From Glycera tridactyla (taxonomy: Eukaryota), in the NCBI GenBank assembly GCA_965644265.1, contig OZ286470.1, positions 9,424,001 to 9,488,000 on the forward strand: a DNA stretch of 64,000 nt. The letters run 5' to 3'. The notes under the pieces are model-generated. The model saw only the letters and a list, made by a program, of their open reading frames with translations. It was not told where the DNA came from and did no database searches. The position numbers were made by a program, and so were the translations under genes. Positions 22,901 through 48,200 of this stretch are shown one piece after another (position 1 is the first letter of the stretch; the number at the start of each line of letters is the position of its first letter).

Positions 22901-25900
22901 CAACCAAACAAAACCAAATCCACTGTCTTTTGTGACTTGGACATTTCATAAGACAGAGACATTCATGACTTTCCTTGATGCGGGATTTGGTGAATCATTT
23001 ACTTCCATGACATTTGGTGACCTGAGCAACGTAATCGACAACGCTGTGAGATCACCATAGATGACACCTGTCTCTTGCAATGTTGTGCTATTTGCTCTAA
23101 AATCATGAGAGTAAACCAATCTAATTTCGCATCTTGCAATTTTCTTCCATAATTCATATCAAATATAATGATGGGTAATGAAGGCAAATACATACAGTAA
23201 TATCTATCGCAGTCATGTTTTGTGTTTATATCATGCCACATGGTAAACGGTTGAAGCCGGGAACTTGTGCCATACAAAGGTGAAACTGACATTAGTGTGG
23301 CTGATTCTTTTGTTCCGTCCGCTAGTGCCACCGAACTCTCCAAATTTGGACCAAATACAATGCTATCCTCGCCGCCCTTTCTTTGTGCTACCTACCTGTT
23401 TCATTTACACCTCAACTTCACTTTCCTTGTGCTCCTTACTTTTTCGAGATCAATCATAGTCATTTTCTTTTGATAACCTGACGTACATTATCTGTGACAG
23501 CTGTGTGAGACGTGAGGGTCGCCTATCATATGAAATTGGCTTGAAATCTGATCTACAAAAGTTTGTTTGTTTATTCATGAAGCATGGACATAAGTCATAT
23601 TACGTGCTCAAACGGTCAACTTAACTAGGCGAACAGCACAATATATGTACAGTACAATAATAATATCAAGGATTTGTGGAGCAGAGAATACATGTTATGG
23701 AGAATACTGTAGAACTAATTGAATATGAGACGGTAATTGACATTATTGTGAGGCTATAAGTTGAGTCGATAGGGAGTATTGTTTTCGAACTTCTAGATGT
23801 GTATAAATTAGTAATTACCTCCCAGAAGACAAATATACAATACAGGAGATACCAACAGCAAAGAACTATGTACATTATCAAGAAAGAATACGCATGTTGC
23901 CTACTGCATAAACTTGAAACTTTGATGCATATAGAGAGAATGCGTAGGTTGAATGCATAGTAGCAACCTACAATCATGCTGTAGAATGGACTATTGTTCG
24001 GCATGACTAGATTCATGAAGGGTTTAGTCAGTGAAAAGTCAGGGAAATCGGCAGATTGGGTGAAATCCGACAAAGGGATTTCAGTGGGAGAGCACAGTCC
24101 TATAAGCCATAGTCGCGAGACCACCTAATTTGCTGTCATATAGGTAGTCTCTACGCAGGTTTTATGGTACATCGAAAGCTATAGCGGTCATAAGATGCCG
24201 TGTAATTATAACGACATGAGAACATGTACATTGGCTGAGGAACTACTTGCTGGACTGTGAAATTATGCAGGTCAGAAAAAAAATGAAGTTTTGGTCAGGA
24301 AATGTCACTTCCTCGACCTCATGGGAACCCTGTTTTCAGGTCCTGATGCTGATATTCAGGTCCAGATGCTGATATGCTTCATAAGAAACCTCTGTGAACC
24401 AGACATATTTTTCTTCATTTCGTTTACCAATGAGTTTTGGTTAGGAACATAACGTGGATAGGTCCGTGAAAGGTATCCTATAATATGATGAACTGACGAA
24501 GACCGTAGCAGATACTTAGCATTTGAATTAGTATTAGTATTTTCATTTGCTCCATCCCTAGAGAAGTTGTAAGAAATTGATTTATTGGTGAGGGTATCTC
24601 TCTTACGATAGGTCCACATTTCACAAAAATATCATAATTCCTTCATCATATGATAAGTGCTGATGGCTATTTTGAAGTTCTGAGATTAGCGTAGTGCCCA
24701 TTGGTTAATTTTTACCAGAGTTTAATATGATTATTCCATATGATCAGTCAATCGATCAGTCATAGTATACTCAGACAATTAATCACTTTTAGTATACTCA
24801 TGGACCTCACTCCTTTTGTCTTGCCCTCCTAAGGTTCCCAAGAAGGCGAGAAACCCCTCAAGTCTGCTATGTCTGATCGGAGAAAGAAATACCGTGCCGA
24901 GCGAAGACATAGCAACTCCCTGGAAGCCCCTTATCCCTACACCCATGGACGCGCCCCTGCCAAGGACGAAGGCCAGCATGACGGTTTGTGGGACCCCTAT
25001 ACTTCATGGCTCTTTCGCCGCCTTCCGTAGCATTTAGGCATTTTGCGACTACCGTATCCCTGCCTACATGATCATATCCTATCTTTTTCTGCTTGAATCA
25101 CCTGTACAATTTTATCACGAATCTTGGAATGGGCGCATGGGCTGCTCACTGCTTGGGTCCAGGTGGCTCTTCATATAATGGTCATGCATGGTATGATTTT
25201 TCATTGAAGTGGTGATAGAGAGAGCGGAGATGGGCTCGCGCTTGCGTGAGAGAGTATGGAAGCCCAAGAGGGACATCCCGTTGTGGTGCTCTTGCTCTTT
25301 CGTAGCCGCGACTTCGTACCCTCGTAGCCGCGACCTCGTACCCTCGCACTCTCGTAGCCGCAACTTCGTACCCTCGTAGCCGCGACCTCGTACCCTCGTA
25401 GCCTCGACCTCGTACCCTCGCACTCTCGTAGCCGCAACTTCGTAGCCTTGTAGTCGTGACTTTGTTCTGTCGCTCCCTCGTAGGCTAGAGGGTGTGAAAG
25501 TGAGGGTGTGAGAGCACGGGCGCGAGAGTGCAGGTACGTGGGTACGAGACTACGAGAGCGAGGGTACGAGAGTGCGAGAGCGTTGGTACGAGGATACAAG
25601 AGTGCAAGAGCGCAGGTACGAGAATACGAGAGCGCGGGTGCGAGAGCACAAAAGCTTGGGTACGAGAGCATGGGTGCGAGGATACGAGATGNNNNNNNNN
25701 NNNNNNNNNNNNNNNNNNNNNNNNNNNNNNNNNNNNNNNNNNNNNNNNNNNNNNNNNNNNNNNNNNNNNNNNNNNNNNNNNNNNNNNNNNNNNNNNNNNN
25801 NNNNNNNNNNNNNNNNNNNNNNNNNNNNNNNNNNNNNNNNNNNNNNNNCTGAATCTATCCGCGCTTGATCAGTCGGGCAGGTCTCTTTTCTGGGTGATTC

Positions 25901-45200: not shown

Positions 45201-48200
45201 AAATGTCTTTCATGAGCAAGATATGATGGCCTCCATAATCAGGATGCAGTTGCTCATGAGGCTTACCTTCACGTTATGACTCATTTCCAGTAACAGTTTT
45301 TCATATAGTCATGCTGTTATCTCATTCATCATTTTATTGAGTCAGCTAAGATTTGGGTATTTGTTTTCTGAATGATTTTTGTCCATTTTGAGTTGCACCT
45401 ATTCCTTATTTGATTCAATTTTGTTTCAATTTTGTTTTATTTGTTTATTTCAAAGGAGCATCAGTACCAGGCAGACCAACAAACTTTGATATATGGGGAG
45501 TTGAAGAAGTTGTTGTCAGACCATTACAGCAGCAGAAGTATGTAGGCATGAAAACAAGAAGAAAACACCTACAGTCATCACCTTCAGTTGATACTGCATT
45601 CAGGCTATCATCCCCGAAACATTCATCCAGTCAAGTTGCTGCGCGGGGATATTTTCACAACTACAGAACAGGCAATGATGATAATTCATAACTTTTGTCC
45701 CTACTGTGATGTTTAAGAACTCCCAAAACATTGGTTTCGTGCAGTTGTTCGTGGGAATTGGCGTTTGAATGAAGTTGATCAATTGACGGACTAATCCCTG
45801 GCCAACCTTTTGATTTTGTTTCATGCATTATATGAATTTGGAGGATTCCTGTATTCAGGCCTTTATCATTGAATCTAAAATAGCCTTATCACGGGTATGA
45901 GAGTAATATGCAAACATTATGTCAATTGGTCAATCTTTCAGTTTTTGTTTATACTGAATGACTTGTTGAATTTGATGGACCCTTCCCTGCTTGTACTTTT
46001 GTGGCAAGTGACAGCAACCAGCTAATACTACAATATTACCCAACAGCGTATCCCCCCCCCCCCAAACCTAAGCTATTATTTGCAGAATTCTTGTCATGGA
46101 AGGAAGAGGACGTTCTCTGTCAACTACACTATCCCAATCATATTTGGTGCAGTAAAACACTATACGAGGAAGGGATTTGGTGTGCATTAACTTTTGTTTG
46201 CTATTGTCCTGAAGTCGAACACTGTGATTCTGTCCAAATGTCACGAAGAATGTGAATAAAGTGAAATCAAATTGTTGCATTAACTTCACACTTCAGCTCA
46301 TATTGATCAGGAAATTGTGCATTACTGAGACTGGAGATAACGGATTTCAAAATTTCCCAGATTTAGTGTTCCTAATTCCAATGTGATCCTTCACGTAGGT
46401 GCCCCCAGCGTCGCTCGAAATCCTCACAGAGTTATGATATGTATATCAACACATGTATCTATATCATTCTGTCTTCAAAATCACAGAGATAGGGTATCCT
46501 TTAAACAGGATCCTTGATTCTGAAGCTGGTGATTCAGACCAACGGATCACATGATGCTTGAAATGTTGCCATTAGTCTTTTGTGACTTGAACTTCTACAA
46601 AGGACCGAAGGGAGGGGGGGGGGGAGAATCTTGAATGGGTGTCCCAGTATATGGCCCAGCTGGTACTCACGAGGTATTGAACAACTGGTCGATCGTCCAA
46701 ACTGATCAGATCATGAGATGCTGTCGGATTGTGAGAATTTATGCAAGTATGATATTTAATTTGCATTTGTTTAGCTTTTTTCGGAGGGGGGGGGGGGGGG
46801 CTAGTCAATCTCACAGAAGTTGTGAGGTGTTTTGGGGATGGTACAGTTTATTTTGTTGGTTTGAACACCTGCAATTCTTTTCTTTGTCGTCTATGTCATT
46901 TTTTATTCTGACACATTACTGTTCTCATATCCCCTCCACTTAGTTTTCCTTATTCTGACACATAACTGCGCTCATATATTCTGTCCATAACCTGTTCTTA
47001 AACTTTGAAGGGATTCTTCAGAAAAATGTCCTTAATGTCTGTGTGGACATGAATGTGACTTCGTATGTGTATGTGATGATGTTACATTGCCTTCCTGCAC
47101 GTAATCTGCTTATCAATTTCTTTTCCATCTGATCTGCAGATAAAGCATCTGGGTTGAATATTATTCACTTTCGAGCTTTCTCATCAGATTTCATCTTATT
47201 ACATTATAAAATCAGTCTGACATAGTCCAAGCATTGCATCGGCAACTTCATCTAGTGTCCCTCTGCAAGAATGTGCTATTATTTTTTTTTGAGAATTCCC
47301 TTCGCATGTCTCTTCGAATATTTGCCAGGCTGCATGCGGTGCAATTCCCCATCTGAATGTCGAGAGAAATGGTAGACCACCCATATTTACTGTTTTGTTC
47401 ATATGAAGGTAGAAATGCAACCATTCCAGGGATATGTAATGCTGGAGAACTGATCTTCTCCCCAGGACTGGTCTGTAAGACTTAACACCTGTTTGCCCAA
47501 GTATATTTACATCTCCTCCATACAAAAATCTGATTTTCTTATATTACCTTCAACTTTCCAGATCACCCATTGCCAACAAGAAGTTCAAGCTCAGGCCAAT
47601 TACTAGTGCCCCCGAGTCATGGTCCTAGGACTAGACCCGGGCAACAGTACCCTCAGGGTTCCATAGACATTGATACCATTATGGACATGGCCCGAGAGGA
47701 GAGGAGAGATGACCGGAGAGATGAAAGACGGGATGACAGACGAGATGAAAGGAGGGATGACAGGAGAGATGTGGATCCAAGTTATATGGATAATCAAAAT
47801 AGTAAGTCAGTTGATTTGTATCATACTAGAATATGTTGCTCTTCTAGAAGCTGTTGTTTTTGTGAACAGCATCACTGATGTTACTGGTCTTGATGGTTAT
47901 TGTATATTCTCTCGATGCTAATGATGATGACGATGACAACGACAATAACTACGACGCGAGTGAGATAGATGATGGTACTAGTGAGGACATCATTAGCCCT
48001 ATTCGACTGGTCGGTCTCGTTGCGTGTGCTTTGGCGGAAATGTACTCAACAGTCGTAGCTAACCCGAATAGGTTTTGTTTAACAAGTTCAACATAGTCAA
48101 ATGACCGTTGAGATCGTATGAAATGAAATATTGTTAAGCGCCACCCGAATTCAAAAAGTACTCAACGACCTGGCCATACTGGCAACGACCTGGCGAAACC

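What the first reader, a model, noticed from the sequence alone, without database searches (positions are those of the whole stretch)
24831..45673. Array exons are enriched for AAG acceptors and GC donors, unlike the downstream exons
Seen: seven of nine array exons (A2-A7, A9) have AAG as the first AG after the pyrimidine tract, while all ten downstream exons use CAG or TAG. Four array exons (A4, A6, A8, A9) have AG|GCA as the best phase-1 donor, and four others have weak GTT donors. Downstream donors are mostly GTAAG/GTATG. Established: AAG acceptors and GC-AG introns are minority classes associated with alternative splicing. Inference: systematically weak sites may be a shared default-skip code for the array. 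Caveats: the GC donors are inferred, since weaker in-frame GT sites exist a little downstream in A4, A6 and A8. A5 and A9 have in-frame CAGs 6 and 9 nt downstream.
Basis: partly seen in the sequence, partly recalled or inferred. Interest (0 to 1): 0.7.

Follow-up and report, generated by a model that had tools for sequence, protein, structure and literature searches.

The report
Weak-splice-site exon array in STAC gene
A worm's calcium-channel adaptor gene (STAC-like) has a run of eight repeated small exons with unusually poor predicted splice signals, which fits optional exons that change the length of a flexible linker, although no RNA data could be obtained to show this.

Summary
The sequence observation holds. 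On the + strand, eight paralogous exons (19832-45671) each encode one basic/serine motif ([KR]R[RK]..[RK]SxS[LIV][DE]xP). Seven of them have AAG as the first AG after the pyrimidine tract. All eight have non-consensus donors: four GC and four GTT. In contrast, 15 neighbouring acceptors are all CAG/TAG and 14 neighbouring donors are all GT[AG] (hand Fisher p about 3e-5 and 3e-6).

The gene is a lophotrochozoan STAC-like gene. The array lies in the disordered linker between the U-domain exon (8.6 kb upstream of the window) and the tandem SH3 exons (60.2-61.6 kb).

- **Donors:** Orthologous exons in other annelid contigs place the donors of A5, A6 and A7 where predicted. The A5 donor is GC in 5 of 6 species. 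A6 and A7 are GC in the closest relative. In all, 9 of 16 orthologous array donors are non-consensus.
- **Acceptors:** AAG is not conserved (2 of 15 in relatives).
- **Optional use elsewhere:** RefSeq isoforms in a scallop, a barnacle and a cricket skip or swap the homologous motif exon.
- **Limits:** No RNA run was listed for this genome, so exon use and default skipping remain inferred.

This is a striking example of a known principle, not a new mechanism. The scan had already noted the A1-A4 duplication (s1-307314).

The parts
19832..19972 (+). Array exon A1 (SNSLEAPYPY type). Acceptor TAG with a poor pyrimidine tract. Donor CACG|GTTCGT. Phase 1-1, 141 nt.
   Evidence: The whole-genome profile hit reaches past a TAA just beyond the donor.
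24834..24983 (+). Array exon A2. Acceptor AAG|GT. Donor GACG|GTTTGT. 150 nt.
25692..25848 (.). Assembly gap (N) inside the A2-A3 intron, flanked by a palindromic 22/30/52-nt minisatellite (25278-25689). It touches no exon or splice site.
26898..27038 (+). Array exon A3. Acceptor AAG|GT. Donor TACG|GTTGGT. 141 nt.
30063..30257 (+). Array exon A4. Acceptor AAG|GT. Best phase-1 donor CACAAG|GCAAAA (GC). This is the least supported donor because no orthologue was found. 195 nt.
34950..35135 (+). Array exon A5. Acceptor AAG, with an in-frame CAG 6 nt downstream. Donor at the orthologous position is AAAAAT|GCAAGT (GC). An in-phase GT (TATA|GTAAAC) lies 15 nt further, at 35150. 186 nt.
37724..37879 (+). 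Array exon A6. Acceptor AAG. Donor TTGCAG|GCAAAT (GC), at the same position as GCAAAT in L015 and GTAAAT in L013. 156 nt.
41157..41378 (+). Array exon A7. Acceptor AAG. Donor ATCAAG|GTTAAA, where L015 has GCAAAT. 222 nt.
41524..41575 (+). Intronic copy (79%) of the last 40 nt of A7 plus its donor, 185 nt downstream of the original.
   Evidence: families D12, D14
45456..45671 (+). Array exon A9. Acceptor AAG, with in-frame GAG at +3 and CAG at +9 and +15. Donor GAACAG|GCAATG (GC). 216 nt.
47562..47801 (+). Disordered linker exon (RDDRRDE-rich). CAG acceptor, GTAAGT donor. Phase 1-1. Used as a control.
48309..48695 (+). Disordered linker exon (SPRE/SPRD repeats). CAG acceptor, GTAAAT donor. Phase 1-1. 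Used as a control.
52411..52560 (+). Motif exon D52 (RRRKKLNMRMKSFSLDTPEPPK), the most conserved copy. CAG acceptor, GAG|GTAGAT donor. 150 nt.
57297..57445 (+). Motif exon D57 (RRSKFWNRSTSLDIDD). TAG acceptor, CCG|GTAAGT donor. Phase 1 to phase 0.
60227..60278 (+). SH3-1 exon (..DTADPDWWK). CAG acceptor, GTATGT donor.
60634..60771 (+). Exon covering the end of SH3-1, the short linker and the start of SH3-2. TAG acceptor, GTATGT donor.
61473..61574 (+). Last coding exon (end of SH3-2, ..PCPVKYLQDI, stop TAA). CAG acceptor.

Best explanation
Window 19.8-45.7 kb holds eight paralogous exons of a lophotrochozoan STAC-like gene (an adaptor of L-type calcium channels). The exons are 141-222 nt long and all are phase 1-1.

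They lie in the disordered linker between the U-domain exon (EIDPVYSLLKCAADLP, 8.6 kb upstream of the window) and the tandem SH3 exons. Each encodes one copy of a basic/serine motif that looks like a basophilic-kinase site.

I read them as optional cassette exons. Poor acceptors (AAG) and poor donors (GC, or GT with T at +3) would make their recognition depend on activators. The default product would then be the short linker: U-domain, then the strong-site linker exons (47562-47801, 48309-48695), D52, D57 and the SH3 exons. Regulated inclusion would add motif copies in any in-frame combination.

**Shown:** the site pattern and its contrast with neighbouring exons; the exon ends of A5-A7 by orthology; long persistence of non-consensus donors; the gene's identity; and optional use of the homologous D52-type exon in other phyla.

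**Inferred:** that the A-type exons are alternatively used, that skipping is the default, and that the weakness is selected rather than merely tolerated.
For: **Site pattern against controls**
- AAG at 7 of 8 array acceptors, and 4 GC plus 4 GTT donors.
- 15 control acceptors are 12 CAG + 3 TAG, and 14 control donors are all GT[AG].
- Every exon from the U-domain donor to D52 is phase 1-1, so any subset keeps the frame.

**Orthologous exons in other annelid contigs**
- Protein conservation ends exactly at the predicted donors.
- A5 donor is GC in the window, L011, L013, L017 and L019, and GT only in L018.
- A6 is CAG|GCAAATAT in the window and L015, and TAG|GTAAATAT in L013.
- A7 is GTTAAA in the window and GCAAAT in L015.
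- Across relatives, 9 of 16 array donors are GC or carry a pyrimidine at +3.

**Gene identity**
- phmmer against PDB hits the STAC2/3/1 tandem SH3 (E = 3.4e-5).
- RefSeq names the relatives STAC-like.
- The U-domain core matches the STAC2 KVD-PVY-ETL residues in PMC6156082.

**Optional use at this gene position**
- Scallop isoforms X1 and X2 differ by exactly the 50-aa D52-type exon.
- Barnacle X1/X2/X3 and cricket X5/X7 swap or skip it.

**Other points**
- Tandem inclusion is tolerated: two D52-type copies in the Paralvinella and chiton proteins, and at least 7 motif copies in one Capitella open frame.
- No protein among 1.84 billion representatives carries A-type exons spliced to other exons.
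- The family is unique to this locus in the 2.04-Gb genome.
- Literature: CAG > TAG > AAG > GAG (PMC2018619); GC donors are about 1% of human introns (PMC3167603) and are enriched in alternatively spliced genes (PMC2490688).
Against: - No RNA run was listed for this genome, so no junction, inclusion level or skipping was observed.
- AAG is not conserved. A5 orthologues have CAG or TAG. A6 is CAG in L013 and L015. A7 is TAG in L012, L013 and L015. A9 is CAG in L011-L013.
- Flanking introns show no conservation beyond the donor hexamer, although such conservation is usual for regulated exons.
- The absence of A-type exons from gene models may only reflect predictors that reject GC donors.
- The A4 and A9 GC donors have no orthologue support.
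- The A5 donor in the window has T at -1, and an in-phase GT lies 15 nt downstream.
- Control counts are small (15 and 14), and no genome-wide frequencies were obtained.
Confidence: 0.55

Rival explanations
1. This is a passive legacy of duplication. The odd sites were copied along with the exons and are simply tolerated, with no role in regulation. The exons would be used constitutively, or as efficiently as any others, thanks to exonic enhancers.
For: - A1-A3 share ACG|GTT.GT and A2-A4 share AAG|GT.
- The same genome has another exon array with 27 consecutive GC donors that an earlier agent read as copied by duplication (s1-333390; not checked here).
- GT and GC interchange freely among close species at A5, A6 and A7, as expected if the change is nearly neutral.
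Against: - A5, A6, A7 and A9 are ancient, separately conserved paralogues, and their orthologues have different acceptors. The AAGs in this species are therefore independent changes, not copies.
- Three of the four GC donors lack the strong AAGT context (no G at +5) that usually makes GC donors efficient.
- The conserved founder-like copy D52 has a GT donor in both species examined.
Confidence: 0.17
2. The boundaries are mis-predicted. The exons are real but are spliced at nearby conventional sites, such as the in-frame CAGs after A5 and A9 or the GT sites downstream of the GC sites. The enrichment would then be an artefact of choosing the first AG and the best phase-1 site.
For: - A5 has CAG at +6. 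A9 has CAG at +9 and +15. A5 has an in-phase GTAAAC 15 nt after the GC site.
- No junction reads were available.
Against: - A4, A6 and A7 have no other in-phase AG near the conserved exon start.
- The donors of A5, A6 and A7 coincide with the orthologous donors and with the end of protein conservation.
- The alternative GT sites of A4 and A6 score far worse.
Confidence: 0.12
3. These are decaying exons. Some or all array exons, above all the lineage-specific A1-A4, are no longer used, and their splice sites are eroding under relaxed selection.
For: - A1-A4-type exons were found in no other species.
- A1 has a poor pyrimidine tract and lies next to assembly gaps.
- A5 in this species has lost the G at -1 of its donor.
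- No spliced protein with A-type exons is on record.
Against: - All eight frames are open, with the motif intact.
- A5-A7 keep their protein sequence across species that differ at many synonymous sites.
- Pyrimidine tracts are good at A2-A9.
Confidence: 0.1
4. This is a mutually exclusive exon cluster of the Dscam or 14-3-3-xi type, with exactly one array exon chosen per mRNA.
For: The exons are paralogous, share the same phase and lie in tandem.
Against: - Lengths differ (141-222 nt).
- Related proteins carry two or more motif copies in tandem.
- No docking or selector complementarity shared by the array introns appeared among the repeats listed.
Confidence: 0.04

Closest known systems
GC-AG introns linked to alternative splicing (Thanaraj & Clark 2001 and the C. 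elegans let-2 case, both from memory; Churbanov et al. 2008, PMC2490688; Kralovicova et al. 2011, PMC3167603)
   Same: GC replaces GT at U2-type donors. Such donors are enriched where exons are optional. GT and GC switch between related species.
   Different: Here four GC donors sit in one eight-exon array. Three of them lack the strong AAGT context. One (A5) has stayed GC in 5 of 6 annelid species. Use in RNA is unproven.
Weak splice sites of cassette exons, and the 3' splice-site hierarchy CAG > TAG > AAG > GAG (as cited in PMC2018619)
   Same: Sub-optimal acceptors and donors flank exons that are symmetric in phase and divisible by three.
   Different: The acceptor weakness is specific to this species' lineage (7 of 8 here against 2 of 15 in relatives). 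It behaves as a property that drifts, not as a conserved signal.
Alternative linker exon of protostome STAC genes (RefSeq isoforms of Ylistrum balloti, Pollicipes pollicipes and Anabrus simplex)
   Same: Same gene family, same position between the U-domain and SH3-SH3, and the same motif (RRKKLNxRMKSFSLDxPE). The exon is skipped or swapped in annotated isoforms.
   Different: Those species show one or two such exons. This annelid has ten motif exons, eight of them in an upstream array with non-consensus sites.
EGF exon array with 27 consecutive GC donors in the same genome (earlier finding s1-333390)
   Same: A tandem exon array in the same genome that is rich in GC donors.
   Different: There the GC donors were read as uniform copies from recent duplication. 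Here the GC donors sit on old, diverged paralogues, are mixed with GTT donors, and are shared with other species.
Modular disordered-linker exon arrays such as the titin PEVK exons (from memory)
   Same: Many small, symmetric exons encode repeats of a disordered segment. Differential inclusion tunes its length.
   Different: The protein and motif are different. No expression data exist here.

Membership tests
Cassette (optional) exon array | Exons are symmetric in phase with lengths divisible by three, so skipping keeps the frame. | tested here: met
   All eight array exons are phase 1-1 (141, 150, 141, 195, 186, 156, 222 and 216 nt). The upstream U-domain exon ends in phase 1.
Cassette (optional) exon array | Splice sites are weaker than those of constitutive neighbours. 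| tested here: met
   AAG at 7/8 against 0/15, and GC or GTT at 8/8 against 0/14, on predicted sites.
Cassette (optional) exon array | mRNAs both with and without the exon are observed. | not testable with these tools
   No RNA run was listed. No spliced protein fragment of this species or another annelid covers the array.
Cassette (optional) exon array | The homologous exon is optional in other species. | tested here: inconclusive
   Met for the D52-type exon in scallop, barnacle and cricket isoforms. No data exist for the A-type exons.
Mutually exclusive exon cluster | Only one paralogous exon appears per mRNA, and the exons have near-equal length. | tested here: not met
   Lengths run from 141 to 222 nt. 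Related proteins hold 2 to at least 7 motif copies in tandem.
Mutually exclusive exon cluster | Docking and selector RNA pairing is shared by the array introns. | tested here: inconclusive
   The repeat search lists only microsatellite pairs and one probable mobile-element pair among those shown. Short or degenerate selectors could be missed.
U2-type GC-AG intron | GC at +1/+2, with AG at the 3' end. | tested here: met
   Predicted for the introns after A4, A5, A6 and A9. The A5 and A6 positions are confirmed by orthologous donors.
U2-type GC-AG intron | The rest of the donor is near-perfect (AG|GCAAGT). | tested here: not met
   The donors are GCAAAA, GCAAAT and GCAATG, all without G at +5. 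GCAAGT at A5 has T at -1.
STAC (SH3 and cysteine-rich domain) proteins | Tandem SH3 domains joined by a very short linker at the C-terminus. | tested here: met
   The best PDB matches are STAC2, STAC3 and STAC1, and the alignment spans the SH3-1 end, the linker and the SH3-2 start (E = 3.4e-5). Orthologues carry PF26085 (SH3_20) and STAC names.
STAC (SH3 and cysteine-rich domain) proteins | A U-domain lies in the linker (the KVD-PVY-ETL core of STAC2). | tested here: met
   EIDPVYSLL sits in the exon at L005:1389-1565. The critical residues are from PMC6156082.
STAC (SH3 and cysteine-rich domain) proteins | A C1 (cysteine-rich) domain is present. | tested here: not met
   Pattern scans of the translated frames found no C1 pattern from 50 kb upstream of the window to 50 kb beyond its end. 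The mollusc and annelid models show no C1 sequence, while arthropod relatives have PF00130. A C1 exon further upstream is not excluded.

The most novel reading that the evidence does not exclude
An annelid STAC-like calcium-channel adaptor has expanded one optional linker exon into an array of eight or more exons that can each be included independently. Each exon adds one phospho-regulatable basic/serine motif. Sub-optimal donors, kept as GC across annelid species (A5 in 5 of 6), gate their inclusion. Cells could then set the number of motif copies (0 to about 10), and so the length of the tether between the channel-regulating U-domain and the SH3-SH3 anchor.
Probability: 0.25. Interest if true: 0.65.

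Novelty: new member of a known kind. Interest (0 to 1): 0.45.

Why it matters
If RNA data confirm it, this would be a compact natural test bed for how weak splice sites set exon inclusion. It holds eight related exons in one gene, with AAG acceptors and GC or GTT donors, next to strong-site exons of the same phase. Related species already supply natural GT/GC and AAG/CAG swaps.

It would also show that invertebrate STAC proteins, which couple to and regulate L-type calcium channels, vary a repeated phospho-motif in their linker. That region already matters for calcium-dependent inactivation in vertebrates.

Without RNA data it remains a well-documented example of a known principle.

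Tried and rejected
- **RNA evidence:** The look-up of sequencing runs on 34900-41400 listed no RNA run. The single search was then spent, so read laying could not be used.
- **Scripts:** the script machine was lost. Later work was done by reading sequence, and the Fisher tests were done by hand.
- **Pfam:** ten exon translations gave only a faint SH3 hint.
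- **C1 domain:** pattern scans of the translated frames over 164 kb found none.
not found. There is no further motif exon and no conserved exon between A7 and A9 in relatives.
- **Exon at about 55.2 kb:** it could not be settled and was left out of the controls.
- **Recursive splicing at the AAG|GT junctions of A2-A4:** rejected because the would-be regenerated donors (GTTCCC, GTTGGC, GTACTC) are poor.
- **Docking/selector pairing:** none seen.
- **Flanking-intron conservation around A6:** none beyond the donor hexamer.
- **Failed look-ups:** P0013 and the Owenia protein P0037 were not on record.
- **Earlier notes of this scan:** none gave genome-wide AAG or GC frequencies.
- **Joined model:** a spliced model was neither built nor searched. 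Exons were searched separately or as an alignment of separate exons.
- **Constraints:** N gaps were not filled.

Full report
**What is there**

The window is G000:C31:9424001-9488000 of a 2.04-Gb invertebrate genome. On the + strand, ten stop-free segments encode a shared motif, [KR]R[RK]-x(5-8)-[RK]SxS[LIV][DE]xP. They lie at 19825, 24833, 26888, 30026, 34925, 37573, 41042, 45392, 52383 and 57263.

A local HMM finds exactly these ten in 164 kb, and none on the - strand. A profile search of the whole genome finds the same ten and nothing else. The family is therefore unique to this gene and is not a dispersed repeat.

A2-A7 are 24834, 26898, 30063, 34950, 37724 and 41157. A9 is 45456-45671. 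I could not find A8. There is no further motif exon, and no conserved exon lies between A7 and A9 in related species.

**The assembly gap**

N 25692-25848 lies in the A2-A3 intron, inside a palindromic minisatellite. It is 709 nt from the A2 donor and 1050 nt from the A3 acceptor. No frame of the gene crosses it and no claim depends on it. I did not fill it.

**Observation check**

- AAG is the first AG after the pyrimidine tract, and in phase 1, at A2-A7 and A9. A1 has TAG.
- Phase-1 donors are ACG|GTT.GT at A1-A3, CAAG|GTTAAA at A7, and GC at A4 (CACAAG|GCAAAA), A6 (TTGCAG|GCAAAT) and A9 (GAACAG|GCAATG).

As controls I read 15 acceptors and 14 donors.
- The U-domain exon upstream.
- Exons 47562-47801 and 48309-48695, D52, D57 and the three SH3 exons.
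- Seven exons of the neighbouring SHOC2-like gene.

The control acceptors are 12 CAG and 3 TAG. The control donors are all GT with A or G at +3.

By hand, Fisher's exact test gives 3.3e-5 for AAG (7/8 against 0/15) and 3.1e-6 for non-consensus donors (8/8 against 0/14). Treating the recent paralogues as single events still gives about 6e-5 and 3e-5. The result would survive a genome-wide AAG rate as high as 30%. All sites remain predictions.

**Which gene**

The exon at 60634-60771 matches the tandem SH3 of STAC2, STAC3 and STAC1 in the PDB. The alignment runs across the SH3-1 end, the short linker and the SH3-2 start (E = 3.4e-5).

Profile and word searches returned spliced relatives that NCBI names 'SH3 and cysteine-rich domain-containing protein 2-like/3' in molluscs and arthropods. 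They also returned a Paralvinella (annelid) model.

These relatives show the exon order. An exon with EIDPVYSLLKCAADLP comes first, then the D52-type and D57-type motif exons, then SH3-SH3. The first of these exons lies at L005:1389-1565, 8.6 kb upstream of the window. Its core matches the KVD-PVY-ETL residues that are essential in the STAC2 U-domain (PMC6156082).

The array therefore sits in the disordered linker between the U-domain and the SH3 module. No C1 domain was found within the 164 kb. Arthropod relatives have one.

**Are the array exons real, and are the sites right?**

Open frames from other annelid assemblies carry orthologues of A5, A6, A7, A9, D52 and D57. In each case protein conservation stops at the predicted donor, and a splice signal sits at the same place.

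| Exon | This window | Relatives |
|---|---|---|
| A5 donor | T\|GCAAGT | G\|GCATGC (L011), G\|GCAATT (L013), G\|GCAAAC (L017), G\|GCAAAG (L019), G\|GTAAGT (L018) |
| A6 donor | CAG\|GCAAATAT | CAG\|GCAAATAT (L015), TAG\|GTAAATAT (L013), GTAAAG on an extended exon (L011) |
| A7 donor | GTTAAA | GCAAAT (L015), GTCAGT (L011), GTAAGG (L012), GTAGGG (L013) |
| A9 donor | GCAATG | GTCAGG (L011), probably GTCAAG (L012), GTAAGG (L013) |

The A5 donor is thus GC in 5 of 6 species. In relatives, 9 of 16 array donors are GC or have a pyrimidine at +3. D52 and D57 in L012 have ordinary donors.

Acceptors behave differently. Relatives have AAG only at A6 and A7 of L011, and CAG or TAG at the other 13 sites.

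A1-A4-type exons were found in no other species. They fade into unalignable intron right outside the exon, so they are a lineage-specific expansion.

**Interpretation**

Poor donors are a lasting property of this array across annelids. The AAG acceptors are a feature of this species' lineage.

Several facts make optional use plausible.
- Every exon from the U-domain donor to D52 is phase 1-1, so any subset can be left out.
- The homologous D52-type exon is exactly the difference between scallop isoforms X1 and X2. It is swapped or skipped in barnacle and cricket isoforms.
- Motif copies can stand in tandem: two in the Paralvinella and chiton proteins, and at least seven in a single 1248-aa open frame of Capitella. 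This argues against mutually exclusive use.
- No protein among 1.84 billion representatives has A-type exons spliced to other exons. That fits rare inclusion, but it could equally reflect predictors that reject GC donors.

The literature supports the premises. The hierarchy CAG > TAG > AAG > GAG is given in PMC2018619. GC donors are about 1% of human introns (PMC3167603) and are enriched in alternatively spliced genes (PMC2490688).

**What is missing**

No RNA run was listed for this genome. No junction, inclusion level or tissue pattern could therefore be seen, and read laying could not be used. Flanking introns of A6 are not conserved beyond the donor hexamer. The A4 and A9 GC donors lack orthologue support. 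In this species A5 has T at -1, and an in-phase GTAAAC lies 15 nt further on. I neither built nor searched a joined spliced model. Exons were handled one by one.

**Verdict**

The 'default-skip code' is partly supported: donor weakness is conserved, acceptor weakness is not, and skipping itself is untested.

This is a new and rather striking member of a known kind, namely optional exons with weak sites and GC donors. It lies in a gene where a variable phospho-motif linker could matter for calcium-channel control.

Noticed in passing
window 41339-41390 and 41524-41575 (weaker third copy at 47144-47162): The last 40 nt of exon A7 plus its GTTAAA donor are duplicated 185 nt downstream in the intron (79% identity). 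This is an exon-end plus donor copy of the 'mirage' kind that earlier notes describe elsewhere in this genome.
   Followed up: partly
window 19538-19621, 29627-29715 and 56372-56455: (ATC)n tracts upstream of A1 and A4 are complementary to a (GAT)n tract upstream of D57. As RNA they could pair over about 80 nt and loop out 27-37 kb that include the array. This may be mere microsatellite coincidence.
   Followed up: no
window 40779-40856 and 47991-48068 (also direct copy 40636-40674 / 47990-48028): A 78-nt inverted repeat (83% complementary), probably two copies of a small mobile element, brackets A7-A9 and exon 47562-47801.
   Followed up: no
L005:1389-1565 (8.6 kb upstream of the window) and the open frame about 12.7 kb upstream (NMDPVFAHLKQAADARKRCLS..): The U-domain exon of the gene lies here (EIDPVYSLLKCAADLP; TAG acceptor, GTATGT donor, ends in phase 1). 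A second U-like exon lies further upstream, and a Lamellibrachia protein shows both (NVDPVFATLKVAGAMRK.. then ELDPVYSLLKCAADLP).
   Followed up: partly
L020:17227-20973 (Capitella teleta, GCA_000328365.1): One 1248-aa open frame between the U-domain exon and the SH3 exons holds at least seven copies of the motif ([RK]R[RK]xFxxQKS[FI]S[CY][ED]V). In this annelid the motif repeats are fused into one large exon instead of being split into an exon array.
   Followed up: partly
proteins P0043, P0046, P0049, P0050, P0052, P0054, P0059 and P0035 (mostly Logan transcript contigs, apparently molluscan): Many transcripts end shortly after the U-domain exon in an alternative last exon (..SLGS[DE]FKN[FY]YK..). 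This gives a short isoform without SH3 domains. Some carry a long helical N-terminal region instead of a C1 domain.
   Followed up: no
window 25278-25689: The N gap is flanked by a palindromic minisatellite. Units TCGTAGCCGCGACCTCGTACCC run for 220 nt, followed by 180 nt of their reverse complement.
   Followed up: no
L006-L010, i.e. 19.8-44.3 kb beyond the window's end: The next gene downstream on the same strand is a SHOC2-like leucine-rich-repeat gene. Its seven exons that I read all have CAG acceptors and GTRAG donors.
   Followed up: partly
window 18114-18646: A 41-nt tandem repeat (13 copies, 90% matches) lies in the intron upstream of A1, between two assembly gaps (17539-17674 and 19360-19511).
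   Followed up: no
window 55233-55320: A possible further exon lies between D52 and D57 (CAG acceptor, CGT|GTCAGT donor). Its phase-1 reading gives ..EDVYNRRQRRVRINCLPRHYP.. It has no counterpart in the related proteins I examined.
   Followed up: partly
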